A stretch of DNA of 63,570 bases, counting the filler, from Platydemus manokwari (taxonomy: Eukaryota), in assembly GCA_037951405.1 (NCBI GenBank). It is 5 parts of 5 records of this genome, joined end to end, with 100 filler letters (N's around TTAATTAATTAA, not from the genome) between each part and the next. Parts side by side here need not be neighbours in the genome. Positions count along the whole stretch, not along the records: positions 15,855 to 27,589 come from JBBMOY010494442.1; 4 more parts are not named here. One strand, 5' to 3'. A program made the position numbers and the translations under genes. Positions 7,346 to 27,589 of the stretch are shown here, in pieces (the stretch's first letter is position 1; the number at the start of each line of letters is the position of its first letter). The notes under the pieces were generated by a model, which was not told the DNA's origin, searched no databases, and worked only from the letters and a program-made list of their open reading frames with translations.

Positions 7346-7356
7346 AGATGGGTGGA

Positions 7357-7461
7357 TGTGATATATACACACATATATGTGTTTATGTTGAGATCCAAAT
7401 ATAATTGAAGGTACTTTTCAATAAATATTATTATTATTGTTAATATTATTTCAATCTTACA
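7357..7461 (+). repeat. Candidate short 3' LTR (TGT...ACA) after a purine tract
   Basis: gaagatgggtgga followed by TGTGA...TTACA, contains AATAAA; no matching 5' LTR seen in the window. Confidence 0.3.
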
Positions 7462-8454
7462 GTAACTATGGAAACAAATGGTGAAGAGTTCCTGAACTTA
7501 CAAATTAGTTACGGATCAATCCTAGAGATATATGTATATCTCTTAATTCATTTTGCTTCACAGTATAGATTCCATTGTCGCATAACTCGTCAATATAGGC
7601 AATATCCATTTAATTTATTTTTTTGACTTGCGGTCATTAAATGTTACTCTATGTTTTGTCTCTTCCTTACCTGACTGTGATTTTTAGACAACAATTTTTA
7701 TATAATTTTTATCTATTCTTTTATGGACGAATCTCATGATGTTCAATATTTTTCTGAAAAAATAAATTGTATATATTTTATTTAAATTTGCACTCTAATG
7801 CCAACTCTTTTCGACATCCGTTTTCCTTAGGATTGGAACGTGATGAAATTTAACAAAAATAAATAAGCAGTGCACTACGATAAATGAAGAATAAATAAAT
7901 TAACTTTTATAGATCTATTAAGTATCCCTATCTTCCTAAGTATGTATGATGAGTTATGAAATAGTCTTTGGAAGCTACATATATATTTAACTGTTGATTT
8001 TTATGCTAAATCTACGGATGCAAATTGTTTTAATATACTCAAAAATGTGTTTTTCAGTCCTAAAGTTACACTTGAAATAAACCACAATCAAAAAGACGCA
8101 GTCAATCAAGAATTTACAATTGAGAACGGCTCCCGAAGAATGAAATAGCAATGCAAAACAATTAATACCAAGAGAAAATTAATGACTATGTAAATCTTGC
8201 AGTTACTGGTGAGATTAAACTTCTTTTATAAACTTGCAGTCTGTGTTTGGGGTCCAGTTATATTTTGTTTATAGAACCTTCTATATGTAGTAGATTATCG
8301 AACAAATCTCGTTCCATTAGCCTATTTAATTTGTTGCATGTTGGTTACATGCATCAATTGATAATAAAATCATATTTATGTATTGATATTTTGGAGTTAT
8401 ATGATAGGCTATTTAACAAGTAGGTTAATCGAATTTGTGCATATATCCATTAAC

Positions 8455-8557
8455 ATGATTAAATAAAGAAACGCGTTGTATTTGTTAAAATAATTGGTTG
8501 GCGGACTAGTGTAGTTTTTTAGATAAATATTATCCCTGAAAGTGTTAATAACGTAAC
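8455..8557 (+). repeat. 5' LTR (or its retained part)
   Basis: atgattaaataaagaaac...agataaatattatccctgaaagtgttaat matches 10405-10506. Confidence 0.8.
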
Positions 8558-10404
8558 TGGCGACCACGCCATACAAATCGATGCAATCACAAGGAATCAG
8601 CAGAAGAAACAGTTATTAGAGAGTTTGCCGAAACAAGCACAAGAAATGCTCAATTTGAATATTCGAAAATTCAATGGGAGAAATTTAAATGAGGTGGCAA
8701 AGCAGATACGCGATACAGAGGTGTGGCTATTAATGAAAAGTTTTAGCCTGATTAGTGCCTTTGATTTACTCCATCCAGACGAGACAGATAAGAGTTCACA
8801 GATTGGTTGAGATGGTGATAAATTCCGAATTGAAACAAGATTCCGTGGTGAAAGATACCATCAGCAAAAGAACACGATCGAATGTGTTTAAAGACGCTCT
8901 TGCCTTAAAGCCAGACTTGAATATCATAGAATTTATGAGTGCTGCAAAGTTCTTTGAGAATCGAGAACAAAGTTTACAACGAGATTCAAAGACAGTCAAT
9001 ACAGTCTATAGAGCCAGCTATGCTATAACGCTAAAAACTAGAAGAAGCAACCGTTGGAATAACTTGCTCAAAACAGAAACCAAAGAGTCAAGTAATTATA
9101 AACCACTACATTCTATCAGAACACGGAAATCTTATCAAATAGTTTTAGAAATGAAAACACTTCAGATAGAGAGAGACCAGTATATTCGATGAAACACATA
9201 GCCAAGATGCATGCCAGATCCAAAAGAAGAACTATTATTTGAAGACAATTGCTTCTTCTGTGGAGAAAGCTGAAACTACAGAAGCCAGTACCCCTTAAGG
9301 CACAAGTGATTAATAGGCGGACAGGAAGGCTATCATTTCAGATCGTGCCATTTAATACGAGGTGCAAGACACAGAGTAGAAGGTAGAATTTTATTTATTC
9401 AGAACGAGATCGGAGAACAATTCGATCCAATTGAAGACCCAATAATACACGAGGAAAAATATCAAAAAAACTTCAACAACTCCATAGCATACATTTTGTT
9501 GGTGGGTTGAATCAATTGATAACAAGAAAATTTGAAATGAAACCAGGCGTGAAGGGATGTTTAAGAAGGACGACGCTAGGGTGTGGAGTTAAGTGTTTAT
9601 CAAGGGAGCTGAAGTAGAGATGTTGTGGACAGGCTTATTACAAAGTCGAACTACGTCCGAAATCCCAACATTTCTCAGCTTTTGGCACAAGAACAGGTCA
9701 ATACTGTTTTAACAGACTTTCGTTTGGACTATCTACAGCACCATCAACCTTTCAAAAACTAATGTACAAGTTGTTGGATGGATTGATTTTTAAAGGCATT
9801 GTTAAATATTTGGATGATGTGCTGATATACGGAAAAACTCAGAAAGAGTTTGACGATCTACAGGAAGTCGTTTTTTACAAATTCAAGAGTCGAGTCTGAA
9901 AGTGAATTCGGAGAAATGTACACTTATCAAAGATGAAGTAAGGTTTATCAGGACGGTACGAGATATGATAACAGCTACTTTAGAGAGTAAGAGCCATGAG
10001 AAAAATTGGGCTGAATTATTGCCAAGGATAGAATTCTGAATCAACGCAACACATCAATCAAGAACGAAGTTTTCGCCTTTCGAGATAATTTACTGGCGAA
10101 AAATCAATGTTCATACAGATGTGAATCACAAGAACCAAACTCGAGATGATATTGCAGAGAAAACTTTAAAGTGGCAGCCGACATAATGTCTAATCGAGGC
10201 AGGTAAAAAAAAACATCGAACATTTTAGGTGGGAGAGAATGTGATCGAGCAGATCTCCATTAGAGGGAGAAGAATGGATACCAGTACGAAGGTTCTTATC
10301 GAATTACCGGATTCAAATCAGGCAGACAAATGAAGATTAAATTTCCTCATGCGATAAAATCCTGACGATTAGAATGGGTGAAAAGGTGAAGTAGGCCTTA
10401 AGTG

Positions 10405-10506
10405 ATGATTAAATAAAGAAACACGTTGTATTTGTTTAAATGATTGGTTGTCGAATTAGTGTAGTTTTTTAGATAAATATTATCCCTGAAAGTGTTAATG
10501 ACTTAA
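10405..10506 (+). repeat. 3' LTR
   Basis: Direct repeat of 8455-8557. Confidence 0.8.
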
Positions 10507-10788
10507 TTTACCCTTTTCAGAGTTATTTTTCAAACATTCAACAATATTATAGCAGTACATAAGTCATTTAAACCAGATTCACCAATTTTTTTAAAAGACC
10601 ATAGATACAATACAAAGTAACATGAAATTGATAACTAGCTCCAAATACGTTTATAAAAATTGACCCCGAAAAAACATTAATATTCTAAAAAAATAATTTC
10701 ACATATCAAAAATTTTATTATTTATTTCAACATAAAATCATTTTAATGTTCCTTAATCTGCAGTAATTTAATCAATATTAAATTTTAA

Positions 10789-11738
10789 TCACAATTTGTA
10801 TGCACCTGCACCATTATTGTAAAGGTAACAATGGATTTCAGATTTCATTGAAAATGAAACACAATTCGCGGACAGAAAACAATTCTTTGCACATTCTAGG
10901 TGAGAGATGTTCTCAATTATTTTCACTGGAATGATTTCTTTGTACTCCGAACGAGTTTCAGATTTAGTAACTATAGACATCATGAACATCAAAATAAGGA
11001 TAATCATTAATTACATAATGAAGGATTTGATTTCGTAAATCGGCTTTCGAATATCTCGACTTCACAGAAATTAATTGGTTTTGCCTCGTGCGGTTTAGTT
11101 ATAACTATTGTTCTTGCAATCTAAATATATTAAATATGAGCGTTTCGAATGAATAATGTGCAATATTTTACAATTCCAGTTAGAGTTATGTTGACAATCC
11201 TTTTTGCTGCTATTTTATTACCATGATAATAGCCAATTTTGAAGAATTTAGACGAATTTTGTACAAATCTCGTTTGAACTTCCAAACTGGCATAAAATGT
11301 TAAAAGACCTGTCCGATAAGCTAAAGTATAACTATTAGATTTATATTATCAAATTTGAATGATCAAACCACAGCAATCAGTTCTAGCATAAATTCGAATC
11401 ATTGAAATGTCGGAAATATTTTTTAGCACTATAAGCCACCATTTGTCGACAAAATGGAGAAAGCTGTGGTAACAAGAATCTGGAAATTCATTATTGCTTG
11501 TTATTAATTTATTTCATATATCACTAGCACTTGAGTTGCTATTGTAATTTCCATCCACGGCATTAGATGCGGAGAAATTTAAAAATACATGATAGTGAGT
11601 ATTTAACGCAAATGTAGGCTGATTCCTGGATAAAATTTTACCTGGATGTGGAGACTTATCAAAGTAGTATAAAAAATTTTAATAACCGATTTCAGCAGAA
11701 TCAATAAAACTAACTAGCCATAATTTAAGAATAAGCAT
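10789..11738 (-). CDS. F-type lectin (fucolectin) domain + C-terminal PAN/apple domain protein, 6 exons
   Basis: Removing five ~44-51 nt GT-AG introns gives an open frame: MLILKLWLVSFIDSAEIG..FSASNAVDGNY..SCYHS..KWWLIVL..IRIYARTDCCAYR..INFCEVEIF..SHLECAKNCFLSANCVSFSM..CYLY. Fucolectin motif H-x27-RxD-x4-R and PAN Cys pattern present; a further upstream exon is possible. Confidence 0.85.
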
Positions 11739-12827
11739 TTCGAAATGAGATGGACGCGTCAATAAGTTATTTTTATCCGAAGGGAACTATGATTTTATTA
11801 AATAAGCCAATCATAATATTTGAAAAGAATATTTTCTAATGGTTTTTATGTTTACTACAATTCTTTAACTTGACTTTTCGTCGAGACCAATTAGTAACCA
11901 ATGATTTCATTGTGATAAGACAAATTCAGGACAAATAATGTTCTATCACCAACATAATGCTCATATTCCAGTATTATGTGTCTTATTTTTATTAAAGCTA
12001 TTGTTAATCACTAAATAACAACAAATATCGCTTATCATGCTTACCGTTCCTCTCATCTAAACATAAATATAATCATCACTTTACAAACAAATTGGTGCCT
12101 TTCATTTAAAATCCAATTGTTAATCATGGAAGGTTTGAAAAGAAAATTAAATAAAAAATAATAAAATATATTTGCACAGTAAAAATCGACCTGAAACAAT
12201 ATAAGAATCCTATTCATAGCTTATAACTGCTAAGCTGTGGAAATAACCAATCATGAGCACACTATTCTCCAGTTACACAAGATTTAAAAGAAAATCAAAC
12301 TTAAAACAATATTTTGTTATGTAAAGCAGTGTTGAAAACATCATTATCATAATCATCATTACTATAACTTTTATATTTCTCTTCGTTATTAAATTTACAG
12401 AACAAAAATCTTGAAGGGTAGAGATATGGGCAATGCACAATAATAAGTAAATACATAAGTGTATATATGTACAAATAATTCATAATAATAATTCAAAATA
12501 TAAATGAGGTAGTAGAAATTATAGCAACACAAATAAGTAAATTATGAATAATATAAATTATTAATATATGTTTCCGTAGTAATACAATAGAAATTTATTT
12601 TTAAATTCAAAAAAATTCAAATCATCATGGTAGCATAAGAAATGAGCGAGGAAAATGAGAAAAATTTGAAAGAAATTATCATGCCCCAAAATATTGATTT
12701 AAGTCCGATTTTTATTAAAACCCGTGTGACTTGAAAATTGGTTATTTTGAGAACTGGTTGTTCGCGCAAATCAGCAATTATCAGTATGAATAAGATTCTA
12801 ATATTTTTCAGGTCTATTTTTACTATT

Positions 12828-14600
12828 AAAATAAATTCATAACAAGCAATAATGAATTTCTAGATTCATGTTACCATAGCTTTCTTCATTTTTTCGACGA
12901 ATGGAGGCTTATAGTTCTAATTATATCATGAATTAATTGAACATGTTTATTAAGGTTTTCTTTTCAAATTTATTATCATTTTTGTCCATTATTTTAGTAA
13001 AGTTCTTATTTTTCTAGATTTTACGTTGTTCGTGGTATTCCTTGAAATATGCTCTTTGCAAAACACATTGTCCTGGATCTTCTTCATTACATCAATTCAA
13101 TAATAACGTTCTTCTTTTCAACAGCATCAAGTGGACTCTTAGATTTAATTTGATTTTACTACAAGAAAATATGTCTTTAATAAATGCTCTCATTTTACAA
13201 TTTACATATACATATATAACACTCGAAATTAAAAAATATTATTGTTAATATTACAAAATTATTTTACAATTTACATACACACACATATATATAAGACATG
13301 AAATTAAAAATTATGAATGTTTTTATTCCAATATTATAAAAATTAGACTATTATTCTATAGCCAAGAACAATGACTTTAATAAATTGGAGACAGAAAATC
13401 GTTGTCATCTGACAATTTTAGATTATTGGAAAACTAAAACACATAACATTCCTTTTCGTTTAATGTTTTATAACATTGTTGGCACCTAATGATTATATCT
13501 ATGTTGATTAGCAAAATAAAATCTTCTGCATTGAGACCATCAGTTAATAATTCATGAATACTGATTAAAATAAAAAGAAGATATATTGAATGAGAAAATC
13601 GGTGTAACCACAATAATCATTATAAAAGCCTGGTGCACAAAATTTATATTGTTAATTAGGTCAACAATGAATTTAATTATTCTCATTTGTTTTTGTCATT
13701 TTATCATGCTTTTTGTAAATCGATCCATTTATTATTAAAATTATTTTACAATTTTGATAAATTTATCATCTTTACTTAAACTTCAGTCCAGAAATCAGCT
13801 TGCATTTGCACTGAATATTTACCGTCTTTAAATCATCAATTTCCCTTTTCCTAAAGTCATTTTGTGGCAACTCTAACAGCAAATCAAATCATAGTGATTT
13901 TGTAAATAATTGAATTATTTGTTATAATTCTTACAAGATTCTTTCAACAAATATTAGGTAATCGTATTGAAAAATATTTCTGATATTTCAATGACCCGAA
14001 TTCATGCTAGAATCGATTGTTGCAGTTATCATATTTACATTTTGTTACTATTTTTATTAATATTATGAAATTAATTGGACAGATTTGTGATCGTCCTATG
14101 AAAGTTTTAAAAAATCCAACGATATTTGAAAAAAAATTCATCTCAATTCTATAAAGTGGATTGTTATCACGGTAACAAACAAAATCACCCGATAAAATAG
14201 TCAACATGAAACTACCTGGAATTGCGCAAAAATTGTTTTTAACAATCGCATTTTAAAACATTCAGACAACCAAAACGATTGTTATTACAAAACCACCTGA
14301 AGCAAAACCAAATGATTTTTGTGAAGTTAAGATATTCGAGGACCGATATGTGAATTCATAAATCCTTCGATTTGTGAGTAATGCTATCTTTATTTTTTTG
14401 CAAACAATGTTCTTGCTAATTATATGTGTAAATCGTCTGGCATGAAAAGATATCATTAAAGTGCAAATTCTTGTGAATATTTTCCATCTAATGATGTGCC
14501 AAGAATTGATTTATCTGTGCTGATTGTGTTTCATTTTCAATGAAATCTGAAACCAATTGTCATCTGTACAATAATACTGGTGACTCAAATAATTGTGATT
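12828..14600 (+). pseudogene. Inverted, disrupted paralog of the F-type lectin-PAN gene
   Basis: 12828-12920 (SCYHSFLHFFDEWRLIVL) and ~13968-14600 (KNISDISMTRIHARIDCC, KPNDFCEVKIFE, DCVSFSMKSETNCHLYNN) match the minus-strand gene; split by ~1 kb of unrelated DNA, with frame damage in the PAN exon. Confidence 0.75.
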
Positions 14601-14869
14601 CTAAACAGTTATATAATTCAATTATCGATTGCATCATGACATCAATATTAAATTTCCCATTTATTTTGTCAACAAATTTGTTTTGATTTTTGGAATCAAT
14701 ATTCAAATACGTATTATTTCAAATGAATTTTATATCGTTAACAACCACTTAAAATCAGGACTTCCATAATTAAGATCATATAAATGGAATTTATACCGCA
14801 AGGAACTGGTTTAATATCGTGAAAGTAAAATGAAATTTTTACATTCACTATAGATTTTGTTCAATGTAT

Positions 14870-15754
14870 CGATGATTTTGATATCTATTCAACAATGTTT
14901 ATCATGTTTGGTTTCGCAAATTGATAATAATAAATCGTGAATAAGTTGATCAATCTAAAATACAACACAGCTTCGTCAATAAAGTTTGTTTTTAACAACT
15001 CCGATTGTTTGCTATATCGGGACATGTTCTTAATTTTCATGGATCATTCGAATACAAGTTTCAATATTTCATTGAAGTACTGTACACCTAGCAATTTCGT
15101 TTTCCTTATAGTATAATCAGCTCTAATTTCCAAGTATTCATTCTCGTTCTAAATATTCTTAAAACACAGAATTTTTGAAAAATATTTTTGATAACGCAGC
15201 TGATTCCATTTATTACAATTTCTATTTATTCATCATTATTTTTATCTCTAAATCTGTCTTGTTCTAGTCGATAAAAAACTTTCTAATCTTTGTTTTTTAT
15301 ATTCCTCTTTTATATTATTTCTTTAATGTGGGTTGTGTTGCTTTATATAGCATTTTTCACAATGAGGAAATCATAATATTTTATCTGTGTTCACGTGTTT
15401 TTTCTTTTTACTAAATTCTTTTGCATTTCAAATATTTCCAGCTCTGCTTTCCATGTATAATATTATGATGTTTTTGAAGAATCCCAATTCCGCAACTATT
15501 TCAGAGCTTCGTGATCAGTTCTGATAATTAATTTTTTACCATAAATTGTCTAACAAACACAAGCTCTCAACTCTTTTCTTGTTATACAATATTTACGCTG
15601 TTCTTTGGTCAGTATTCTTGATGCGTCCTATATCACTCGTTCTTCACTGTTTTGATTTTGGGAAAGCACGGCTCCTGTAGAAACATTTTCTCATGCCAAA
15701 ACAGTATATGACAAGGTTCAAGATTTGGCAACAATGCAACAAAGGCCAGATGAA
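14870..15754 (-). mobile_element. Decayed Gypsy RNase H/integrase-proximal fragment, same family as 3700-7345
   Basis: Minus strand TGAVLSQNQNSEERVI*DASRILTKEQRKYCITRKEL and RTDHEALK; nucleotide similarity to 7100-7330. Left boundary approximate. Confidence 0.75.
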
Positions 15755-15854
15755 NNNNNNNNNNNNNNNNNNNNNNNNNNNNNNNNNNNNNNNNNNNNTT
15801 AATTAATTAANNNNNNNNNNNNNNNNNNNNNNNNNNNNNNNNNNNNNNNNNNNN
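15755..15854. other. Artificial contig spacer (44N-TTAATTAATTAA-44N)
   Basis: Same 100-nt layout at four places; the linker puts stops in all six frames. Confidence 0.97.
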
Positions 15855-16630
15855 ACTTTGAATATTTAATATCGACTTAATTTCATTATTTATTGATTTT
15901 AATTTTATAAAATAAAATAAAATTTAAAATAAAAATTTATTCATTATCACTTTTTATTTGTTGTGATGTGAGTAGTTGACATTCGAATCAGTACCTTGAA
16001 ATTATATTAAGAAATATTGGACTGAAAACGTGTTTGGAATTGAAATGAATGATTTTAGTCGTAAATAATGTGTATCAAGTGACTGTGAGCCTTATTGTAG
16101 ACTTAATTTTGATTTCGGGTTGACTATCTGTCATAATTCTTTCGAAATTTAGAAAACATGAAAATCGATCAGAAATTGTTTGACAATCATTAGTTAGGGT
16201 TTGTAAAGAAATAATATTGAAATTGACAACGATTTGATCACAGGAATTCGCGAAAGGAATTGTTAGGAAATTAATTAAAAATGTGAGTAATTGGGATTCG
16301 AAACTGTGCCGTAAGATATTATTAATAAATAATTGAGTGACAATGTGATTAAAAATGATTTCTATTTTTGTCTACAATTTTATTTTCTACAAGCGCTATA
16401 ACTGGCATTACTTCGATTTAAAAATTTGATAAACATTTAGACGTAAAATAAAATTATAAATTGTCACTCAATTTGTTTTAATAAATATAAAAATGTAAAA
16501 CAGAATGTTTAAGGGGAACTATAAGCAGTTTGGTTTAACTATTTTACAACGAAATCAGCATGAAATGTTTTAACTTTTACAGTTGAGAGATTGTTTTAAA
16601 TTATTTAATAAGCGCATGTTTTTAAATTAT

Positions 16631-16670
16631 TAATAACAATAACAATAACAATAACAATAACAATAACAAT
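16631..16670. repeat. (AATAAC)n microsatellite, ~6 units
   Basis: Read directly. Confidence 0.9.
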
Positions 16671-17615
16671 ATCACTTTTCTATATGAATATAAATAATTT
16701 TTTGAATAAAAGATTTCTAAAATATCACAATTCGTTGATTTTATCAAAGCCATGAACAATTATTAAAATATCAGAACACTTTTATATCAATGTCAAGCGG
16801 TGGTTCGAATCCCAGATTGTTCACATTTTTATTGATTTTCCAACAATTCTTCTCACATATTGTTATGATAAAAAAAATTGTATCAACTAAAATATTACAC
16901 TCAAAGTCTCAGCAATAACAACAGCGAATCTTTTTACAATTCAGAAAATCACTTAAGACAAAATCAGCACCTGAAAATCAAATACAGAATGAAAAGTAAT
17001 GAAAAAGATTGATGATTAAAATCACACATAAGCTAGGCACTCGAGCTTCTTTTATAGTCCTATTGGTTGTGTATGTGATGTCACGGATCTTCGTTTTCCA
17101 TTTTGGTGAATTTGTTTGTGGATTGATTTACTTGAGTTTTTCCTTATAGCTCAAGTAATATTTCAGCTTGCTGCCATTTGGAGGTATGCACCTGTTGATT
17201 CGTAGCTTCTAAATATGATTTAACAGTAGAACGACTCTGATTGGTTAACATTGGTTTTCATCGGTTCTATGTGTATTAACCTTTTTCGGATTCTTTGGCT
17301 GGTTCTTGTGACTCTTCTCATTGATTGGTGATGTACTCAACAGAATTAATAAACCCGTAATATAGGATTGGGTGATTTTATCTTATATTTTTTGATAAGT
17401 CTTCAATTTCGAATTCTGATGGTCATCGAAGCAATCTAGCTAGTTTCATTGATCAAAAATAATGAACTACAAGTTAATTTAGATTTTCTTAAAAATTTTG
17501 AAAATAACATTTGATGTCCAGATGCAAATATTCTCAATCAATCAATAAATATCCTATTTCATATGATTTCTATTCAGTTATCGATTTTAAGTTTAGTATC
17601 TGTTCAGTGATAAAT

Positions 17616-17837
17616 AAAATGTAAAGATTTATGTTGGATATTTGTATTGCATGATTATTCACTTCCTAACACCAGAACCCGGGTTGGAGAACAACTGTTA
17701 TCGGATCCGGCATTACAGTTGTTCGCCGACAAGTGCTGGTCGATTAGGTTGCGATATAATCGTGTAACAATGCAAATATCCAATATTTCATAAATCCGGC
17801 TCTCACGTAGTTGAGTTACAGACGCGCCACGTCCAGC
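17616..17837 (-). ncRNA. 7SL/SRP-like Alu-domain RNA, copy A (~220 nt, rod-like body, shortened helix-3 loop)
   Basis: 5' GCTGGACGTGGCGCGTCTGTAACTCAACTACGTGAGAGC; nested stems GATTTATG/CATAAATC, TTGGATATTTG/CAAATATCCAA, GATTAT/ATAATC, CCTAA/TTAGG, ACCAG/CTGGT, AACAACTGT/ACAGTTGTT; ends TTTACATTTT. Confidence 0.75.
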
Positions 17838-17911
17838 CATTTTCCAATTCTATATTTATTAACTTCAATTAAATGATAATCGCGTCTACTTACAACTATT
17901 AGTAGATAATT
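17838..17911 (-). promoter_or_regulatory. Putative external Pol III promoter of copy A (upstream box -74..-48, TATA-like about -24..-17)
   Basis: AATTATCTACTAATAGTTGTAAGTAGA ... TAATAAAT at the same spacing in all four full copies. Confidence 0.6.
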
Positions 17912-18555
17912 TGAACATTATTTTTTATTAGATGCTATTGAACTATTTTTTCACAAATAAATAAAAATTTTATTTCAAATTATTTAATTTATGTCAAATT
18001 CAATCATTTTGTAAAAATAAAATCATTCTTAACTTTTTGTAAAGAACAAAATCGAAATCGACATTGATTTGATCACAGAATTTAATTAAAAATGCGAATA
18101 ACTGGGATTCGAATCTGTGACTTAAAATTATGTTAAGAAATATTGGACTGAAAATTTGAATTATCATCTGAAGCTGTGATGACAAGTTGTGATGACAAGA
18201 CTAGAGAAGCGATATACAATAATTGATAAAAAATATGAGCAGCCAAGAATACGAACCGGTTTTTCTTAAATGAATCAATACATTCATGCTAATGGATTGA
18301 ATGATTTGAGGTTATATTCTTTGATAAATCTACAATTTTGAATGCTGATGGTAATCGAAACAATCTGGCTAGATTCATTGAACAAAAATAATGAACTACA
18401 AGTTAATTTAGATTTTTATGATTATTTTATAAATAACATTTGGTGTTCATATTCTCAATAAATCAATAGATATCCTGTTCCATATGATTTCTATGCATTT
18501 ATCGATTTTAAGTTTAAATATATTTTCAAAAACATTTTTAGTGATAAACAAAATG

Positions 18556-18767
18556 AAAAGATTTATGTTGTGATGGAGCACATGAATATCCCTTCCTACA
18601 CCAGCCCCAGGTTCTAAACTTCTATCTTCTATCTTTGTAGATGTTTGTCTTTACCATGGTCTGTTTGTATAGCTTGTGGGATAATCATATAGCATTGTAT
18701 TTATTCGTCACTTCATAAATCCGGCTCTCAGGTAGTTGAGTTACAGACGCGCACCACCACGCCCAGC
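18556..18767 (-). ncRNA. 7SL/SRP-like Alu-domain RNA, copy B (~212 nt)
   Basis: 5' GCTGGGCGTGGTGGTGCGCGTCTGTAACTCAACTACCTGAGAGC; loop-loop complement GGTGGT/ACTACC; stems GATTTATG/CATAAATC, GTGA/TCAC, TATCCC/GGGATA, CTATAC/GTGTAG; ends TTTT. Confidence 0.8.
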
Positions 18768-18841
18768 CATTTTCCTATTCTATATTTATTAACTTCAATT
18801 GAATAATAATCGCTTCTACTTACAATTAAAAGTAGATAATT
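18768..18841 (-). promoter_or_regulatory. Putative external Pol III promoter of copy B
   Basis: AATTATCTACTTTTAATTGTAAGTAGA at -74..-48; TAATAAAT near -24. Confidence 0.6.
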
Positions 18842-19699
18842 TTAAATTTATTTTTAATTAAATGTTATTGTTCATAAATTATAGTGAAATCGATAAAATA
18901 GTTCACTTGTAAATTATTGCAGAATGAACTCTAAATTGATCATTGATTGACTCCAGTTCAAATCAATGGTTTTGTAAATCTTTAGAAATATGAGAAATGA
19001 ATTCGCGAGTTTTTCATTGAATATTATCAAGCATACAAATGTTATAAAATTACATTTGTTATCTGATTGATTTTCAAATTTGATATCTTTAACTTGAAAT
19101 AAATCAATAAATCAATATTAAAAATTTTATTAAATCAAATATAAAATTTATTGACTAAGAATCGTATTGAAGTAACGCCAAAAAATTTATTATTGATTAT
19201 TCAAAGAGGACATTTGCTCGTTTCCTTGTAAGATGATGCGTGAAAGCGTTACTGATGATGAGAAAATAATGTTAACTGGTACTAAAGGAAAAGATACAAT
19301 TCCAATAGTGGATCAGACACGTGAAAAGCTACCATAACAAGGTACAATAAAAGACACGAAAGAATGGAGGAGCATAAATAAATAATTGATTTGGATTGTG
19401 ATGACACGTGCTTATAATTTTGAATGATCCAATTAATTATCAAATCATCAGCTATTTCACATTTGATAAAATTAAAAATACTAAATAAAACTCGAGTGAT
19501 AATGGAACAATAGACCTAGAATCAATAAACACGATATTAATTGATTTATTGAATTATCATTAAATATTTGAGTGAGATTGGTGCAGTAATTCATCAGCCT
19601 TTATCAAGCGTAGGCGTTTTTCTGAAAAAGAGAAAAACAAAAAATACAATAAAATATGGCGTCTATCAAACAATTGGAAAATTATATCAAGCCATCATA

Positions 19700-20560
19700 A
19701 TCCATTCAATCAATTTCTTAATACAATTCTCTCCTTAAATAATTTTCTTTCATTTTCTATTATATCAGGATATCTTGAAACCAATTTCAAATATATACAA
19801 GAAAGAATTTGGTTGTTTATGATTTCAGTGTCTTTTCCTATTTGTTCTTCTTTTGGAATATTTACACATTCTTTATCAGCAACAATTATAAAAGGAACTG
19901 GTATTTGATGTTTATGTTTTAAAATTTTAACATGTTGTTGTAAGGGAAACTTTGTTCATTTCCATTATCTTTCATATTTGGCCGAATTATTTTTGGTTAT
20001 CTTTTTCCATCTTTTCCACATATTATTTGGTGATTTATAGAAACATTTTCTTTTACAAAGTAAGAACAACATTTATCACAGACATCTAATTTATCATTTT
20101 GTTTTCATTTATAATTCAATTCTCCACCCATAAATTGTTTAAAATTTTAATGAGAGCATGATGGGTTTTACCATTGTTTTTCTAAATGTAACAACTTGAT
20201 ATCTTGATTATATTCTTTATTTTTAGAAATATATTTTAGAAATAATTTATAGTTTTTTTTCCTCCTTTCTTCTTTCCTTCCTTAATTAGGCATTTTATTT
20301 CATCAGCATTGATTTTAAATTATTGTTCTTTTCATATATTTTTTATTTCACTAATGGGTATTGGAAATGTTACTCCATCTATATTTAATTAGTCAAAATG
20401 TTTTGTGAATTGATATAAATAATTCTCTACATCAACTATATTATTAGAGACAAAAGATAAAGATACATAATTACTTCAGGATAGTACATTTATGTTTGAA
20501 ATGTTTACTTTTATGCCCCTAATTCAAATATATTCTAACCACTGCCTTTAACCTTTAACA
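19700..20560 (-). mobile_element. Decayed Polinton/Maverick-type DNA polymerase B N-terminal region
   Basis: Broken minus frames LNIDGVTFPIPISEIK..EKNNNLKIN and KHQIPVPFIIVADKECV resemble the Polinton pPolB FP..I..FEK.N and VPFVIYADFE motifs. Confidence 0.65.
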
Positions 20561-21676
20561 AATCATCATCTAGTTTCTGTGGAAATTCATTGGTGGATTC
20601 TAATGATTGATCTGCATTCATTGGATCTTCTCTTATTTTCGATGTCTGATCTGAACTTAATGGTATTGTAATGCAATCATATTCATTTGTATTGTGATTT
20701 ATATTTTACAGGATAATCTTAACATTTATTTGTTCTATAATACTACTTCTTTGAATACAGAAAACTGAAGGGAAATTTCGGAAGGTTATCGATTTACGGA
20801 TATTGAAAAATTAGAAATATTTTTATTGGAACCGAATAGATGTTATTTTTGTTCAGAGAGTAATATTCGAGGAAATTGTTTCCAGAATATTTGTACACTC
20901 ATCAACTTTAATTGTAAAATATTCGAGGACGTTGCTCTCTAAAATCGGTAAATCAAAAACGTTTAGTGTAGTGAGTCTGTAACTGTTTATTGCGCCTCTT
21001 GTATTGTAACATAGGTCAGTAGTAGATAAAAATTGTTAGCGAACTGGTTATGTGATTTGTTGTTAACTTGAATATAAGATTGGACTCTTGATTGTGATAT
21101 TGCAATTTAAATAAACGATCGTAAAGTTGTTTTAAAAATAAATCTTACTATTCAACCGCCATCTTTTTGGAGTTAGATAGACAGAATCTAATGAGTATTT
21201 ATCGCGATCTACAGCAGGTAGACTCAATAAATTTGTGATATACTTTTTTCAACATGTTGGTGTAAAAGGAATTTGTACTGGAGCAAAACATGGAAGTGCT
21301 TTCTTGGTTAATAATTATGAAACAAAATCTATAAATATGTGTGTGTGTTGATAAAAGCTCTTATCCTTATTTAAGAAAGAAACGAAATTCTATATCTACA
21401 AAACCTAAATTATTAATATGTGAATTTAATAAACCACCAAATAATGGGTTTTCTATTTACTTAATTAATAAATTACTTAAAGATTTAAAGACTATATAAA
21501 ATTATTTAATTTATTGGTAATATATTTTCTAATAGATCATCAAAGAGTAATCTCCTGGAATTTATAATATTTAATAAAAGTTTATCCGATAATGAAAGTT
21601 CAGACATCAAAGATTTTTTTTACAGAAAATTATCGTGATTTGGAGTATTACTAAATTCTATATTAAATTAAATAAA

Positions 21677-22140
21677 ATGGAAGATCAAAAACTTTACCCT
21701 AACCTTGATAATTTTAATGATTCAATTGCCCCACCAGATTCTAAAACGATGAGTCCATCTTTTCTAAGCTATGAAAACGATAAGTGAAAAATAAATATTA
21801 ACATCTTTAAAATAGAAAAATTTTGGAATAAGAAAACAGTTTTAGAAGAATTATCAAATCATTATGATAAATAAAAAATTAAATGAAGTAAAGTAGATAA
21901 TGGTTTAAAGTATTCAATTATCATATATGGTTGTGTTTTAGCGGTTGTGTCAATTATTTTACCAACTCTTTCTGATGTTGGAATTTAACTTATAATTACT
22001 TTATATTGTGGAGTTGGAATTGGTTTATTCACGATAATAAAATCAATTATTGGGGAAACATTTCATATTGGTTTAAGCAGTAAAAAGAATAAAAATGTAT
22101 AAAGAAGTTTGCGAAGTGATAAAACATGATATTTCAATGC
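21677..22140 (+). mobile_element. Decayed Polinton-like small ORF (LYP.L / hydrophobic segments)
   Basis: MEDQKLYPNLDNFNDSIAPP followed by broken helical and hydrophobic segments; lies next to the pPolB remnant. Confidence 0.4.
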
Positions 22141-22502
22141 AATATTTCTTAATCTAATTTTAGGGCACAGTTTCGAATCCCAACGAATCAAATTTTTAAT
22201 TAATTTCTAATTTAAAACGAATTCCTGTGATCAAATCACTCTCAATTTCGATATTATTTCTTTTCAAAAAGTTAAGAATAATTGTCCTACATAAAAACAG
22301 TGCTACTAGAAGGATTTTGAGCAACAACCTATATATTACATCGGTTGTCAAAATATTTTAACTCGTAGATGTGGTTTGCTTCTTGGTTTATTATATTATT
22401 ATACATCAGTGCAACATCCTTGTTGGACTTAAGAAACGATTTCATATTAACTATTAAGTTTTCAAAAATTAAAATTCTTTTCGATTTGGAAATAATTTTT
22501 TC

Positions 22503-22858
22503 AAAAGATTTGTGTTGATTTGAATTGCATGATATCAGCTTAGACTTCGTTTTATATTTTTTTTCGGTTTTCCTCTTTCGATCTGACATAACTTTAGTCG
22601 ATCTACTCGATTGTTTTCCGTTTTTGGTTTATTGCTTTTTTTTGTATTTTTTCATTTTATAATTTTTTTTTTTTTTATTTTTGAATTTTTTTTTTTTTTT
22701 TGATTTTTTGATTTTTTTGATTTTATAATATTTTTTCAACTCAGTTCCAAACAGAATATCATGGTGAATATGATTTAACAATATATCACCCATAATTCAA
22801 ACTTCACAAATCCAGCTCTCAGGTAGTTGAGTTACAGACGCGCACCGCCACGTCCAGC
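22503..22858 (-). ncRNA. 7SL/SRP-like Alu-domain RNA, copy C (~356 nt, A-rich interior)
   Basis: 5' GCTGGACGTGGCGGTGCGCGTCTGTAACTCAACTACCTGAGAGC; stems GATTTGTG/CACAAATC, TTTGAATT/AATTCAAA, CATGATAT/ATATCATG; ~120-nt A-rich tract; first TTTT only at the 3' end. Confidence 0.75.
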
Positions 22859-22932
22859 TGAATTTTGTTTAGCTATTTATAAATTTCAACTAAGCGATGA
22901 TGTGTTCTATTGACAACTGAAAGTAGATAATT
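22859..22932 (-). promoter_or_regulatory. Putative external Pol III promoter of copy C
   Basis: AATTATCTACTTTCAGTTGTCAATAGA at -74..-48; TTATAAAT near -24. Confidence 0.6.
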
Positions 22933-23234
22933 TTCAATTGATTTTTATTACTTGACAAAAAAAATCACAACTAATACAATTCAAAATCACTAATTTAATA
23001 TAAATACACGCACGAATATTAGATGAATACTGAAGATTAAGTTGGATGTAAAAAACTACTAATAGAAGGATGATGTCGAATTATTGTATGTATATGAAAC
23101 ATCTTGAATACAATACGAATACATCGAGAATACTTTATATAAGCGCTGAGACACTCACATTTATATTGATTTTTAAATAATTCTTCTCACATATTTTTAT
23201 GAAAAAATAATTGGCCAAAGGTAAAAAAGGGTAC

Positions 23235-23587
23235 CAAAATAAATTTTTTAATTTGTTTAAGGGTATTGCGAAAATTTATATAGTTTATTTAATTATATTC
23301 TTTAAAAAACATTTATTTAATTTTTTATTAAAGTATTTAAGAAGAATTTTAGTTGTTTGAAATAAAATATTAAATAAACTAGATCTTAAAAATCTCCTAA
23401 AATTTGATTATTTGAAAAAATGAAAATAGAAGGTCGAATTGCAATTTATTGAAAATTAGCGAGGATCCTTTTTCTAACACACGAAGCAAATTGAGATGTC
23501 ATCTAAATTTTTACAATAACTCATAAAAATAACCAATGATATTATTAAACATATCTGTGATTAACTAACTCGATTTATAATTATAAA
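23235..23587. repeat. Dispersed ~360-bp AT-rich repeat, copy 2
   Basis: Colinear with 2680-3036. Confidence 0.8.
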
Positions 23588-24525
23588 AAATTAAATTTAA
23601 AAACTTAAATTTAAAAACATATAAAGTTAAGTTATAAAATTATTTCAGGCGCTAAATTTCATAATAACGAAAGTAGGTCAAAGGTCTAATTTTCTTAACT
23701 TAAGCCAAATAATTAATAATTTCGATATTTTTCATTTACCAAACATCATCAGTGATCGAAAAAGTATGTCTGCTGAAAAATAGATATTTTAAAAATTTAA
23801 AGATTAGTGAGAGAGAAGTAATTTGAATAATCATCTGAAGGTGTGATGACAAGATAAGTGAATCAATACACAGTAATTCATAAAAAATATGAGCAATCTA
23901 GAATACAAACCGGTTCCTCTACAATTTCTAATTTTGCTATCTTCATCGATTAAGAATAAAGTACTCTAGTTAATTCAGTATTTCTCAAGAATTTTATAAA
24001 TAACATTTCGTTACCAGATGAAAATATTTTTCATGGGCCAATGAATTTAATTCCTAATATACTTTAACTCATGCATTCAGAATGTCAATCAATTTATTTG
24101 TCAGTTGTTTGTTTTAATTACTGATATTCTGACTATAAAATGTTAGTTATTGACTGCGAAAAAATAAATATATCTAGAACTATAAATGAAATTATTCCAA
24201 ATATTTTTTGATGTTAAATTGATTTATCGGGTTTCACTTCTCAATCAATCCAAGTACTTTTGTTTTAATTATTAAATGATCGGTTTTTAAAAAAATTTTT
24301 CACAATGTGACAAAATTACGATAGCGAACGAATATTTAAAGGTGTTGTTAGAAGTGAGATGTGATTTATAATAGCTCTTTTACCTCTACTGATATACAAT
24401 ATAAATATAGTATACATATAATATCAATAAAATTTTATACTCATAGTATGTTTCAACGTACCATCAGTCTTACTCGTACTAGTACGTATGAGTAGATTTT
24501 ATATTTTAAAGTAAGATTTATAAAA

Positions 24526-24732
24526 ATGAATCCAAATAAAATTCGATACGATGTTTATACTGGTGATGAATTGTCAGTAATAGATATTAACATAAGATAT
24601 CCAGACCAAAAAAACCAATTAGAGTCTGCTTGTGATCCAAGACTAGGAGCAAGTAATGTAGGTTTATGTAATCTAAGTGAGAAAAAGGTTATTATTATAC
24701 ACCCTAAAATAATAAAAAAAGATACCCCCTAA
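24526..24732 (+). pseudogene. Fragment resembling the N-terminus of an RNA polymerase largest (beta-prime/RPB1-like) subunit
   Basis: KIRYDVYTGDELSVIDINIRYPDQKNQLESACDPRLGASNVGLC resembles the I.FG..S..E....I..P....DPRLG....C start of RPB1-family subunits; stops after 68 codons. Confidence 0.5.
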
Positions 24733-24816
24733 TAAGTGCATGTTTTCAAATTAAGAAACGATAACAAATAAGTTTTTATAAATTAAAATTCTATTCGATT
24801 TGGAAATAATTTATTC

Positions 24817-25106
24817 AAAAGATTTGTGTTGATTTGAATTGCTTGATATCAGCTTAGAATTTCGATACACTTTTAATATCTTTATGTGCTTTCAGCATGG
24901 TGGCAGAAAGTACATCTGTATTTTTTTCTATTCAATTCCAAGCTAAACATCATGGTGAATATGATTTAGCAATAGAACCCTCACGGCGCTAACCTTTCGT
25001 AAGTCATCATGGTGAATATGAACTATTATTTAATCACCCTTCATTCAAACTTCACAAATCCAGCTCTCAGGTAGTTGAGTTACAGACGCGCACCACCACG
25101 TCCAGC
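24817..25106 (-). ncRNA. 7SL/SRP-like Alu-domain RNA, copy D (~290 nt)
   Basis: 5' GCTGGACGTGGTGGTGCGCGTCTGTAACTCAACTACCTGAGAGC; stems GATTTGTG/CACAAATC, TTTGAAT/ATTCAAA, TAGCTTGGAATT/AATTCTAAGCTG, GATGTACTTT/AAAGTGTATC; ends TTTT. Confidence 0.8.
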
Positions 25107-25180
25107 TGATTTTTGTTTAGCAATTTATTAATTTCAGTTAAACCATAATGTGCTCTATTGACACCTGATATTAGATAATT
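25107..25180 (-). promoter_or_regulatory. Putative external Pol III promoter of copy D
   Basis: AATTATCTAATATCAGGTGTCAATAGA at -74..-48; TAATAAAT near -24. Confidence 0.6.
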
Positions 25181-26879
25181 TTTAATTGATTTTTATTAGA
25201 TGACCAATTTGAAAAAAACTATCCTTCTCAGTTCACCATTGATACACCAGAAATAAGAAAATCGATTATATCAATGTAGACCTTGGATGTTGGAACAATG
25301 TTTTATTATCATGAGATTGAAATATAATTATTCACTAGATAAGAAGTTTTGATTTTACAAATATTTCTGTGCACTTAAACGACAGAGGAGTAAAATCAAT
25401 TTTTTAACAGCTTTTCAATCAAAACCGATAAATAAGAGGAATAAGAGGATGTTGAGGTAAATAACTAATGATCTTACCACTATTAATGCTTACTGATCCT
25501 CTTATTGGTGTTGGATTGAAAAATCTTCTCAAAATAAAATCAATATCAAAGTGATCTTTCAGTAATTTACTGGGTATATGACTTTCGAAGATTTGAGCAA
25601 TTTGACTGGCTTGATCTCTTACGCAACTGAATTTTGTTGCTAGTGGTTTAATAATGAGTAAGTCTACTGATGTTGTGAGCCTATTTATATGGTTGTTTAT
25701 TTGAGTGCAACTTCCTTATCAAATAGACGTATTATTCAAATGTACATTATGTGAATAATTCACATTATCAGGTTCAGGAGTACAATTACAAGAGTTTCGA
25801 GTTTAGTTCAAACTTGCCTTGAGGTTCAGCTCAAGCGTAACAGCAAAATATTAGGTGCTCAAACAAGTAATGACAGTTATCGTCCATAAGATCATCACAT
25901 TTTATCCAAGTTCAAATTGGAAGATAAATTGATTATTTCTTTGTAAGAGAGACTCATACTGACAAGATATAGAGTGTTTTAAAGCTTGTTATGATTTATA
26001 TAACAAAATCTATTGTACAAGGTTGCACTAAAATCTGTGATTGGAGAAACCATTTCAGTGAGTACGATAGATGAGCAATTAACAGTTCTTATCAAAATCG
26101 TTACAATCCAATTGTTATCAAATGCAATTGTCTAAAATGACAAACCCAGTGACGTGAGACTTGTAGTAAAAAACCGTTCATTAATATACCCAGCAAATGA
26201 AGCGTCTTGTCAAGGGCTTCACTATATGGACTTGGATGTAAATTGTTTATTTACAAAGTGTGAGACATTGCAATTCCAATATTTCGTAACATAATCATAA
26301 GGCACAGATTCGAATCTCAAACTACCCACATTTTTAAAATATTGGAAATTAGATGTTAATATTATTTTCATTATCTATATCTCCAAGAATTAAACTCTTA
26401 AAATTAGGTGTTAATGGAATATTATTTGCATCAGCTGAATAAGCATTATTATCGAATTCAATAATTAAATATTGAATTACATTGATTTTCATAAATAAGA
26501 AATCCATACCATTTAAAATCTTTAATTCGAAAGATAATATGTATGGACTTGAGTATGATATTTCCCAATCGAATTTTAATAAATTAGGATTTGCATATGC
26601 AGATTTTGGTTTATTTTCTTGAATATTTTTCTTTGAATTTACATTATTTATATTTTCTTGTTTATTTTTAATACCTTTTAAATTTTAATTTCCCTCTTCT
26701 ATTGCTAATTGTGGTTTTTACTGATTTCAAAAAGATGTAGGAAATAAGACGATAGCTTGATTTAACAAAATTTTTGAATATTGTTGTTCTTCAGCTTTAC
26801 TTACTTTTATTGATGTCAAAACCATTTATTCATAGCCATTCTTTAAAACTAAATCGATTTAATTTTTCAGTTACAACAT

Positions 26880-27589
26880 AACAATTGAAATGAATGATTA
26901 TAATCTTAAACAATAATGTGTAAATAATGTGTATCAAGTGAATGTGAGACTTATTGTAGTTTAAACTACGACTTCGGGTTAATTATCTGTCATAATTCTT
27001 TCTAAATATGAAAATATGAATCTCGATCAGAAATTGTTTGACAATCATTTGTAAAGAAATAATATCGAAATCGACATTGATTTAATCACAGAAATTCGTG
27101 AAAGGAATTGTTAGGAAATTAACTAAAAATGTGATTAGTTGGGATTCGAACCTGTGACTTAGAATAATATTAAGAAATATTGGACTGAAAATGTGAATGG
27201 TCATCTGAAGCTGTGATGGCAAGACTAGAGAAGCGATATACAGTTATTTATAAAAATTATTGGTAGCCAAGAATACGAACCAGTTCCTCTTAAACGAATC
27301 AATACATTCATGTTAATAGATTGAGTTAGTTGAGCATATTTTATTTGATAAGTCTACAATTTTGAATGCTGATGGTCATCGAAGTAATCTAGCTAGATTC
27401 ATTGATCAAAAATAATGAACTACAAGTTAATTTAGATTTTCTTAAAAATTTTGAAAATAACATTTGGTGTGCAGATACAAATATTCTCAATCAATCAATA
27501 AATATCCTGTTCCATATGATTTCTATTCAGTTATCGATTTTAAGTTTAGTATCTGTTCAGTGATAAATAAAATGTAAAGATTTATGTTG
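26880..27589. repeat. Repeat module forming the 3' flank of A/B/E-type 7SL-like genes; contains a B-box
   Basis: Homologous pieces at ~15970-16320, 17370-17636, 18000-18570, 23825-24030 and inverted at 22140-22290; GGTTCGAATCCC on the minus strand at 27141-27152. Confidence 0.85.
27569..27589 (-). ncRNA. 3' end of a fifth 7SL-like copy (E), cut by the assembly gap
   Basis: CAACATAAATCTTTACATTTT and its flank are nearly identical to the 3' end of copy A. Confidence 0.65.

What the first reader, a model, noticed from the sequence alone, without database searches (positions are those of the whole stretch)
17838..25180. Indel-free 74-bp upstream promoter shared by all four 7SL-like genes
Seen: AATTATCTA starts exactly 74 nt before +1 in A (17838-17911), B (18768-18841), C (22859-22932) and D (25107-25180). 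A TGT.A.TAGA block ends at -48 and T(A/T)ATAAAT sits at about -24..-17. The -16..-1 spacer differs between A/B and C/D but keeps its length. Known: type-3 Pol III genes (U6, 7SK) need a fixed PSE-TATA distance. Inference: selection on a working external promoter, which argues the genes are expressed and gives a candidate PSE for this species.
Basis: partly seen in the sequence, partly recalled or inferred. Interest (0 to 1): 0.7.

Follow-up and report, generated by a model that had tools for sequence, protein, structure and literature searches.

The report
Shared promoter of 7SL-like RNA genes
Five neighbouring genes (one cut off by the piece edge) encode small RNAs that keep only the "Alu" end of signal-recognition-particle RNA, and the four complete ones share a ~100-bp upstream block with a TATA-like box at a fixed distance, most likely an external RNA polymerase III promoter, though expression is untested.

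Summary
On the minus strand, AATTATCTA starts 74 nt before the G of GCTGG in all four copies. TGTMARTAGA ends at -48 and TWATAAAT lies at -24..-17. No indel occurs from -88 to -1.

Three corrections apply:
- Homology starts near -100, not -74.
- Within each pair (A/B, C/D) the 3' flanks are as conserved as the upstream block, so only the A/B versus C/D comparison is informative.
- The genes are not 7SL proper. They keep a complete SRP Alu domain but have no S domain, and Rfam scores are 40-43 bits against a cut-off of 70.

Between the two types, only three regions align: -100..-17 (72-76% against a 32% background), about +1..+65, and the last ~32 nt ending CAACAYAAATCTTT(T). The -16..-1 spacer is at chance level but keeps its length. 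The RNA bodies (212-356 nt) contain no TTTT. One helix-5 pair covaries (A-U/G-C).

This favours constraint on an external promoter and Pol III transcription units. The block lacks the CCC-type USE of plants and ciliates. No RNA data or other snRNA genes were available, so the PSE assignment stays a hypothesis. Verdict: plausible promoter of a low-copy, clustered family of 7SL paralogues; moderately interesting.

The parts
17838..17937 (-). Copy A upstream block (-1..-100): distal A/T block, AATTATCTACT 17901-17911, AGTTGTAAGTAGA 17885-17897, TTAATAAAT 17854-17862, spacer 17838-17853
17623..17837 (-). Copy A RNA (~215 nt): Alu-domain 5' part with a 5-nt deletion in the helix-3 loop, long near-perfect helix-5 hairpin, 3' end CAACATAAATCTTT followed by a further TTTT at 17616-17619
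   Evidence: a near-copy elsewhere in the genome carries the 5 missing nt
18768..18867 (-). Copy B upstream block: AATTATCTACT 18831-18841, AATTGTAAGTAGA 18815-18827, TTAATAAAT 18784-18792, spacer 18768-18783
18556..18767 (-). Copy B RNA (~212 nt): intact helices 2-4, helix-5 hairpin, ends CAACATAAATCTTTT
   Evidence: (40.1 bits to RF00017)
22859..22958 (-). Copy C upstream block: AATTATCTACT 22922-22932, AGTTGTCAATAGA 22906-22918, TTTATAAAT 22875-22883, spacer 22859-22874
22503..22858 (-). Copy C RNA (~356 nt): Alu-domain 5' part, ~170-nt A-rich internal tract (about 22575-22740), 3' strand of helix 5 and CAACACAAATCTTTT
25107..25206 (-). Copy D upstream block: AATTATCTAAT 25170-25180, AGGTGTCAATAGA 25154-25166, TTAATAAAT 25123-25131, spacer 25107-25122
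24817..25106 (-). Copy D RNA (~290 nt): Alu-domain 5' part, variable interior carrying an internal 57-nt duplication, 3' strand of helix 5 and CAACACAAATCTTTT
   Evidence: (42.7 bits to RF00017, S domain deleted in the alignment)
27575..27589 (-). 3' end (CAACATAAATCTTTA) of a fifth, A-like copy (E), cut off by the edge of the piece. Its 3' flank 27319-27574 is 93% identical to that of A

Best explanation
The piece holds a same-strand cluster of at least five paralogous small-RNA genes derived from SRP (7SL) RNA. Each keeps a complete Alu domain: helices 2-4 at the 5' end, plus both strands of the base of helix 5. The S domain is replaced by a fast-changing interior.

The ~100 bp in front of each gene is a gene-external promoter, read as follows:
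- A TATA-like element (TWATAAAT, -24..-17) probably positions TBP/TFIIIB.
- The bipartite block at -74..-48 (AAATTATCTAMT ... TGTMARTAGA), 23 nt upstream of it, is the candidate taxon-specific PSE/USE-type element.
- The A/T-rich block at -100..-75 may add to it.
- RNA polymerase III starts at the G of GCTGG and stops at the T-run directly after the 3' strand of helix 5.

Shown here: the homology, the fixed spacing, the uneven conservation, the Alu-domain fold, the TTTT-free bodies and the 3' T-runs. Inferred: promoter function, the polymerase, the factor that binds the -74..-48 block, and expression.
For: - Between the two gene types, only three regions align: -100..-17, about +1..+65, and the last ~32 nt.
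- Over -88..-17, cross-type identity is 72-76% against a 31.6% background. The adjacent -16..-1 is 31%, which is chance level, yet exactly 16 nt in both types. The probability of 5 or fewer matches in 16 at p=0.7 is 1.6e-3. So neutral sites look saturated and the conserved blocks need constraint.
- The TATA-like nonamer is 9/9 identical in A, B and D and 8/9 in C.
- No indel occurs in -88..-1, although the units carry 13-14 gap events elsewhere. P(0) is 0.06 for A/B and 0.03 for C/D.
- The RNA side behaves like a Pol III gene. None of the bodies of 212-356 nt contains TTTT, whereas only 10%, 10%, 2% and 5% of windows of the matching lengths in the piece lack it. Each ends CAACAYAAATCTTT(T).
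- Helices 2, 3, 4 and the base of helix 5 are 99% paired, against 22-51% when the partner is slid. One pair shows a compensatory A-U to G-C change between types.
- Full-length folds are better than shuffles, with z of -5.2, -2.3, -3.6 and -3.0.
- There are no target-site duplications.
- Copy number is low: depth is a few-fold above the flanks, against 16,800-39,000 for a true repeat in the same stretch.
- The architecture (a taxon-specific upstream element plus a TATA box at fixed distance) is that of type-3 promoters, which also drive SRP RNA genes (PMC8287931, PMC9841428).
Against: - No RNA run holds the locus, so neither expression nor the 5' end is shown.
- Within pairs, the 3' flanks are as conserved as the upstream block, and most indels sit inside the RNA interior rather than in the flanks. 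The indel-free argument is therefore weak within pairs.
- Only two independent lineages (A/B and C/D) carry the cross-type argument.
- The TATA-like box lies a few nt closer to +1 than the usual -30/-24.
- The -74..-48 block has no CCC core like the plant, ciliate or stramenopile USE (PMC8287931, Table 1).
- Conservation is spread over -100..-17 rather than sitting in two crisp boxes.
- Several copies look damaged: a 5-nt loop deletion in A, a 170-nt A-rich tract in C and a 57-nt duplication in D.
- The base at -1 is a purine in all four copies.
Confidence: 0.55

Rival explanations
1. The cluster is a decaying gene array. The copies are pseudogenes, or mostly so, spread by segmental or tandem DNA duplication. 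The shared upstream block reflects common descent plus occasional gene conversion from a functional 7SL master gene elsewhere, not present-day selection on these promoters.
For: - The units are ~0.9-1 kb repeats whose 3' flanks are as similar as the promoter.
- A, C and D carry lesions.
- The interior of A/B is the least conserved part, at 70%.
- Rfam scores are sub-threshold, and A gets no SRP hit at all.
Against: - A conversion tract spanning -100..+65 would also homogenise -16..-1, which is at chance identity between types.
- TTTT-free bodies, including a 356-nt A/T-rich one, are not expected in neutral DNA.
- Neither is a compensatory helix-5 change.
- All pairwise similarities stop at the same upstream point near -100.
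Confidence: 0.2
2. The upstream block is functional but is not a SNAPc-type PSE. As in mammalian 7SL and 4.5SH genes, an internal A-box-like element in helix 3 works together with upstream activator sites and a TATA-like box, giving a mixed type-2-like promoter.
For: - Mammalian 7SL genes combine internal boxes with a TATA-like box at -31/-24, a CRE at -51/-44 and Sp1 sites at -90/-60. The 7SL-derived 4.5SH genes share these (PMC7279448).
- Here GGCGTGGTGG at +5..+14 resembles the atypical 7SL A box (sequence reading).
- Conservation is spread over ~85 bp.
- TCTAMT...ARTAGA forms a dyad of the kind used by dimeric factors (perfect 6+6 in A/B, one mismatch in C/D).
Against: No B-box-like GGTTCGANNCC is visible at +50..+70 (sequence reading). 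Copy A has lost the A-box-like GTGGT, yet a near-copy of it is retained in the genome. Nothing here can tell which factor binds.
Confidence: 0.15
3. The unit from about -100 to the T-run is a mobile element (SINE-like or another non-autonomous element), or the upstream 100 nt is part of a longer transcript. On this reading the upstream block is element body, not promoter.
For: - All copies share the same 5' limit near -100.
- C carries a long A-rich tract.
- The surroundings are full of repeats.
Against: - No target-site duplications.
- Low copy number.
- All copies are clustered on one strand.
- The A-rich tract is internal, and C/D homology resumes after it.
- Copy B has TTTT at -64..-61, which would stop Pol III inside the block.
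Confidence: 0.05

Closest known systems
Type-3 (gene-external) Pol III promoters of U6/7SK/MRP/SRP-type genes: PSE/USE plus a TATA box at fixed spacing
   Same: Entirely upstream. A conserved block at about -74..-48 and a TATA-like box downstream of it sit at invariant spacing (23 nt between -48 and -24). PMC8287931 quotes 23-24 bp USE-TATA spacing for Pol III in Arabidopsis, though the measuring convention may differ. The gene ends in a T-run. PSE/USE sequences are taxon-specific (PMC9841428).
   Different: The sequence is unrelated to any PSE/USE consensus I could compare. The TATA-like box lies at -24..-17 rather than about -30..-24. Conservation continues to -100. Sharing of the motif with other snRNA genes, and SNAPc dependence, could not be tested.
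Plant, ciliate and stramenopile USE (CCCAYAA-like; RTCCCWTA in Stentor) in front of SRP, U6 and telomerase RNA genes
   Same: SRP RNA genes in these groups are driven by USE plus TATA (PMC8287931).
   Different: No CCC-containing motif occurs anywhere in -100..-1 of the four copies.
Mammalian 7SL genes and the 7SL/B1-derived 4.5SH RNA genes
   Same: A 7SL-derived small-RNA family sits in repeated genomic units. Its 5' flanks carry conserved elements at fixed positions (TATA-like box, -50 element, -90/-60 element) that are needed for transcription (PMC7279448).
   Different: Those genes rely on internal A/B boxes plus CRE/Sp1 sites, and 4.5SH arose through a retroposed SINE. Here there is no B box, the motifs are different, the copies look like DNA-level duplicates, and both strands of helix 5 are kept.
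Alu, B1 and BC200 RNAs (Alu-domain RNAs without an S domain)
   Same: The SRP Alu-domain fold is kept (helices 2-4, UGUAA motif) and the SRP54-binding S domain is lost. Copy C even has an A-rich middle part, as BC200 does.
   Different: These copies are not retroposed: they share an upstream flank, have no target-site duplications and are low in copy number. They are closed by the authentic 3' strand of helix 5. SINEs derived from 7SL are described as unique to Alu and B1 (PMC7279448).
Canonical SRP RNA (Rfam RF00017 Metazoa_SRP, clan CL00003)
   Same: The 5' 48 nt and the closing helix 5 align well to the model, and the 3' end has U's.
   Different: Scores are 40-43 bits against a gathering score of 70. 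The model's S domain is deleted in the alignments. A is not detected at all.

Membership tests
SRP RNA (Rfam RF00017 / clan CL00003) | Alu domain: helices 2, 3 and 4 with the UGUAA turn | tested here: met
   positions 1-48 align with high posterior, and all 14 pairs are standard in B, C and D. A lacks 5 nt of the helix-3 loop.
SRP RNA (Rfam RF00017 / clan CL00003) | Helix 5 closed by the 5' and 3' ends, with a 3' U-run | tested here: met
   nine pairs GGAUUURUG/CAYAAAUCU are present in all four, with one compensatory change.
SRP RNA (Rfam RF00017 / clan CL00003) | S domain (helices 6 and 8, the SRP19/SRP54 binding site) | tested here: not met
   the model's S domain is deleted in the alignments of B and D. 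The interiors differ between A, B, C and D.
SRP RNA (Rfam RF00017 / clan CL00003) | Score at or above the curated gathering threshold | tested here: not met
   no hit at gathering; 42.7 and 40.1 bits against 70. A gets no SRP hit.
Type-3 Pol III promoter | TATA box about 25-30 bp upstream of the start | tested here: inconclusive
   TWATAAAT at -24..-17 is conserved in all four. It sits slightly closer than usual, and the true start site is not mapped.
Type-3 Pol III promoter | Proximal/upstream sequence element at fixed distance from the TATA box | tested here: met
   TGTMARTAGA ends at -48 and AATTATCTA starts at -74 in all four, with no indel from -88 to -1.
Type-3 Pol III promoter | The same PSE/USE shared by the other snRNA-type genes of the genome (U6, U1-U5, MRP, canonical 7SL) | not testable with these tools
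   No other RNA gene lies in the piece. The rest of the genome is not available. Metagenome scans were empty.
Type-3 Pol III promoter | SNAPc and Brf2/TFIIIB recruitment, and independence from internal elements | not testable with these tools
   Needs ChIP or transcription assays.
Type-3 Pol III promoter | Termination at a T-run, with none inside the gene | tested here: met
   no TTTT in any of the four bodies. A T3-4 run follows directly after helix 5 in all four.
Plant/ciliate-type USE | CCC-core motif (CCCAYAA, RTCCCWTA and similar) | tested here: not met
   No CCC occurs in -100..-1 of any copy. Consensus sequences come from PMC8287931, Table 1.
7SL-derived SINE (Alu/B1-like retroposon) | High copy number, unrelated 5' flanks, a terminal A-tail and target-site duplications | tested here: not met
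   Depth is only a few-fold above the flanks. 100 bp of 5' flank is shared. The A-rich tract of C is internal. No target-site duplications were found.

The most novel reading that the evidence does not exclude
An AT-rich organism outside the primate/rodent lineage may have independently evolved free 'Alu-domain' RNAs. They would have arisen by DNA-level duplication of its 7SL gene together with the gene's external promoter, not by retroposition. The Alu domain and promoter stay under selection while the S domain is replaced by variable inserts. Such RNAs would be expected to bind SRP9/14 and act on translation or SRP assembly. The -74..-48 block would then be this lineage's own, so far undescribed, PSE.
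Probability: 0.3. Interest if true: 0.65.

Novelty: new variant of a known kind. Interest (0 to 1): 0.45.

Why it matters
If the block is a working promoter, it gives a concrete motif pair: AAATTATCTAMT-N3-ARKTGTMARTAGA, then 23 nt, then TWATAAAT, then 16 nt to +1. That pair can be used to find the Pol III or snRNA-type genes of a poorly annotated, AT-rich genome. It would also show that 7SL paralogues lacking the S domain are kept as expressed genes. 7SL-derived Alu-domain RNAs are otherwise known from primates and rodents, where they arose by retroposition. If the block is only shared ancestry in a decaying array, the finding is ordinary.

Tried and rejected
- Rfam at gathering threshold gave nothing.
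- ARAGORN found no tRNA, although a tRNA-3'-like motif is repeated.
- The search for sequencing runs found one holder of unknown kind, kept as contigs, and no RNA run. Expression could therefore not be tested. Laying that run's contigs gave only copy-number hints.
- Two metagenome scans with the invariant Alu-domain core gave 0 hits.
- Exact-protein look-ups for two ORFs found nothing on record.
- Pfam on ten stop-free pieces gave no credible family.
- The Atlas look-up was uninformative.
- The organism could not be identified.
- My impression that 19713-19955(-) resembles a Polinton-type DNA polymerase, and that 24526-24729(+) resembles an RNA polymerase N-terminus, got no support from Pfam and is dropped.
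- SINE/retroposon reading rejected: no target-site duplications, low copy number, shared 5' flank.
- Reading C and D as ~100-nt scAlu-like genes, as the Rfam alignment of D suggests, was rejected. The conserved 3' strand of helix 5 and the T-run lie 290 and 356 nt downstream of +1.
Full report
**Observation**

The piece (15855-27589, about 26% G+C) carries four copies of the 21-mer GCGCGTCTGTAACTCAACTAC, all on the minus strand. Each lies inside a sequence that begins GCTGG. The Rfam SRP model aligns to it from model position 1 in B (18767) and D (25106).

I took that G as +1: 17837 (A), 18767 (B), 22858 (C) and 25106 (D).
- AATTATCTA at -74..-66.
- AGTTGTAAGTAGA / AGKTGTCAATAGA at -60..-48.
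- TTAATAAAT (TTTATAAAT in C) at -25..-17.
- A 16-nt spacer that differs between A/B and C/D.

The ungapped register holds from -88 to -1. The similarity is not a product of base composition. Cross-type identity over -88..-17 is 72-76%. Random windows of the piece give 31.6 +/- 5.5%, with a maximum of 50%.

**Where the homology starts and stops**

The 74-bp limit is arbitrary. All four copies align up to about -100 (CATCTAAT-AAAAAT...), with a single 1-nt indel in an A-run. Beyond about -103, even A versus B and C versus D fall to chance.

Downstream the picture differs by comparison:
- A and B share about 600 bp (17365-17940 against 18294-18870, 76.6%).
- A's 3' flank is 93% identical to 27319-27589. 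That stretch ends with the last 15 nt of a fifth, cut-off copy (E).
- C and D share 22429-22959 against 24751-25207, with large indels.

Within pairs, the 3' flanks (84-88%) are as conserved as the upstream block (83-87%). The interior of the A/B RNA is the least conserved part, at 70%. Within-pair conservation says nothing about selection.

The absence of indels is unusual against the whole unit, with P(0) of 0.06 and 0.03. But most indels sit inside the RNA interior.

**The informative comparison: A/B against C/D**

Only three regions align between the types:
- -100..-17.
- About +1..+65.
- The last ~32 nt, ending CAACA(T/C)AAATCTTT(T).

The 16 nt between the TATA-like box and +1 are at chance identity (31%) but of identical length. 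Given 70% identity next door, 5 or fewer matches in 16 has P = 1.6e-3. Neutral positions therefore look saturated between the types. The retained blocks need either constraint or repeated, oddly interrupted gene conversion.

**What the genes are**

They are not canonical 7SL genes. Nothing reaches Rfam's gathering score. B and D score 40.1 and 42.7 bits against 70, with the model's S domain deleted in the alignment. A gets no SRP hit even when searched alone, because it lacks 5 nt of the helix-3 loop. A near-copy of A elsewhere in the genome carries those 5 nt.

C and D are not ~100-nt genes, as the Rfam alignment of D might suggest. The conserved 3' strand of helix 5 and the T-run lie at 22503-22540 and 24817-24854. 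The RNA lengths are therefore about 215 (A), 212 (B), 356 (C) and 290 nt (D).

All four fold into helices 2, 3 and 4 plus a helix 5 closed by GGAUUURUG and CAYAAAUCU. In this fold 99% of cells are paired, against 22-51% when the partner is slid. One pair changes A-U to G-C between types. I derived the structure from these same sequences, which flatters that comparison. Full-length folds beat shuffles, with z of -5.2, -2.3, -3.6 and -3.0.

The interiors are unrelated between types and unstable within them:
- A near-perfect long hairpin in A.
- A weaker hairpin in B.
- A ~170-nt A-rich tract in C.
- A 57-nt duplication in D.

So the conserved RNA part is a complete SRP Alu domain and nothing else.

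**Polymerase**

None of the four bodies contains TTTT, although they are A/T-rich. Only 10%, 10%, 2% and 5% of windows of the matching lengths in the piece lack TTTT. Each body is followed at once by T3-4, and A and B have further T-runs after that. B has TTTT inside the upstream block at -64..-61, which argues against that block being part of a Pol III transcript. Together with the TATA-like box, this fits a Pol III unit with a gene-external promoter.

**Not a mobile element**

No target-site duplications flank the units. All copies lie clustered on one strand. In the only public run that holds the locus (contigs, kind unknown), depth over the genes is a few-fold above the flanks. A real high-copy repeat at 21361-22124 reaches 16,800-39,000. 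The family is low-copy.

**Comparison with known systems**

Type-3 promoters consist of a taxon-specific PSE/USE plus a TATA box. They also drive SRP RNA genes (PMC9841428; PMC8287931). The present layout matches that architecture. Its 23-nt gap between -48 and -24 resembles the 23-24 bp quoted for Pol III genes of Arabidopsis, although the measuring conventions may differ.

The USE consensus sequences listed for algae, Blastocystis, Stentor and Plasmodiophora all have a CCC core. No CCC occurs in -100..-1 here, so the block is not a member of that USE type.

Mammalian 7SL genes, and the 7SL-derived 4.5SH genes, carry a TATA-like box (-31/-24), a CRE (-51/-44) and Sp1 sites (-90/-60) in their 5' flanks, and these work with internal boxes (PMC7279448). 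That is the closest analogue of a 7SL-derived multi-copy family with conserved 5' flanks. It also supplies the main functional rival: activator sites plus an internal A-box-like element, rather than a SNAPc-type PSE. Nothing here can tell which factor binds.

**What could not be done**

- No RNA run exists for the locus.
- Metagenome scans were empty.
- No other RNA gene lies in the piece.
- No protein family was recognised.
- The organism stayed unidentified.

**Verdict**

The promoter reading is the best-supported explanation (about 0.55), resting mainly on the cross-type pattern and the Pol III-like gene anatomy. Calling the block a PSE, and calling the genes 7SL, goes beyond the evidence.

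Noticed in passing
window 21361-22124: A very high-copy repeat: summed contig depth is 1,700-16,800 per bin and reaches 39,900 at single positions, with up to 68 variant contigs, against about 12-50 for single-copy contigs. It contains an ORF-like frame (about 21677-22100, + strand) with hydrophobic stretches. The frame is interrupted by in-frame TGA and TAA, and these are not among the best-supported differences in the other copies. That could point to a nuclear code in which TGA or TAA are sense codons, or simply to non-coding sequence.
   Followed up: partly
window 15966-16032, 16267-16348, 16790-16830, 18078-18159, 22132-22193, 26275-26337, 27124-27196: A repeated ~70-nt module whose consensus ends ...CACAGnTTCGAATCCCAACTACTCACATTTTT. 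It looks like the T-loop and 3' end of a tRNA plus a Pol III terminator, and occurs in both orientations. ARAGORN finds no tRNA, so it is probably a tRNA-derived repeat. In the A/B/E units one copy lies about 600 nt downstream of the 7SL-like gene, on the same strand.
   Followed up: partly
window 17366-17636, 18294-18570, 27319-27574; fragments at 23838-24028: A ~270-nt module directly downstream of the A-, B- and E-type genes is conserved (93% A/E, 84-88% A/B). It recurs as a fragment between C and D without any adjacent Alu-domain gene. There are weak, chance-level C/D-snoRNA hits (snoR27, E = 1.2 and 5.7) at 17375-17458 and 27343-27411.
   Followed up: no
window 22575-22740: A ~170-nt A-rich tract (T-rich on the + strand) lies inside the predicted RNA of copy C and is absent from D. 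The layout recalls the A-rich middle of BC200/BC1-type RNAs, but it may simply be a microsatellite expansion.
   Followed up: partly
window 24949-24974 and 25006-25031: Copy D carries an internal direct duplication (CATATTCACCATGATG and its neighbours), with the two copies 57 nt apart. C has the segment once.
   Followed up: partly
window 17885-17907 (and the same positions in B, C, D): Inside the upstream block, TCTACT and AGTAGA form an inverted repeat separated by 10 nt. It is a perfect 6+6 in A and B, with one mismatch in C and D. This is a possible dyad site for a dimeric factor.
   Followed up: no
window 17824 (copy A): The public run contains a near-copy of A (10 differences in 370 nt, depth about 50) with 5 extra nt at this position. 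So A's helix-3 loop deletion is private to this copy, and an intact sibling exists elsewhere in the genome.
   Followed up: partly
window 19642-20978: A moderately repeated region (depth 200-730) with stop-interrupted and frame-shifted ORF pieces on the minus strand, for example 19713-19955. From memory it resembled a Polinton-type polymerase N-terminus, but Pfam found nothing.
   Followed up: partly
window 24526-24732 (+): A 68-aa ATG-to-stop ORF containing ...ACDPRLGASN..., which from memory is reminiscent of the N-terminus of RNA polymerase largest subunits. There was no Pfam hit and no record of the exact product.
   Followed up: partly
window 16633-16671: An (AACAAT)n microsatellite.
   Followed up: no
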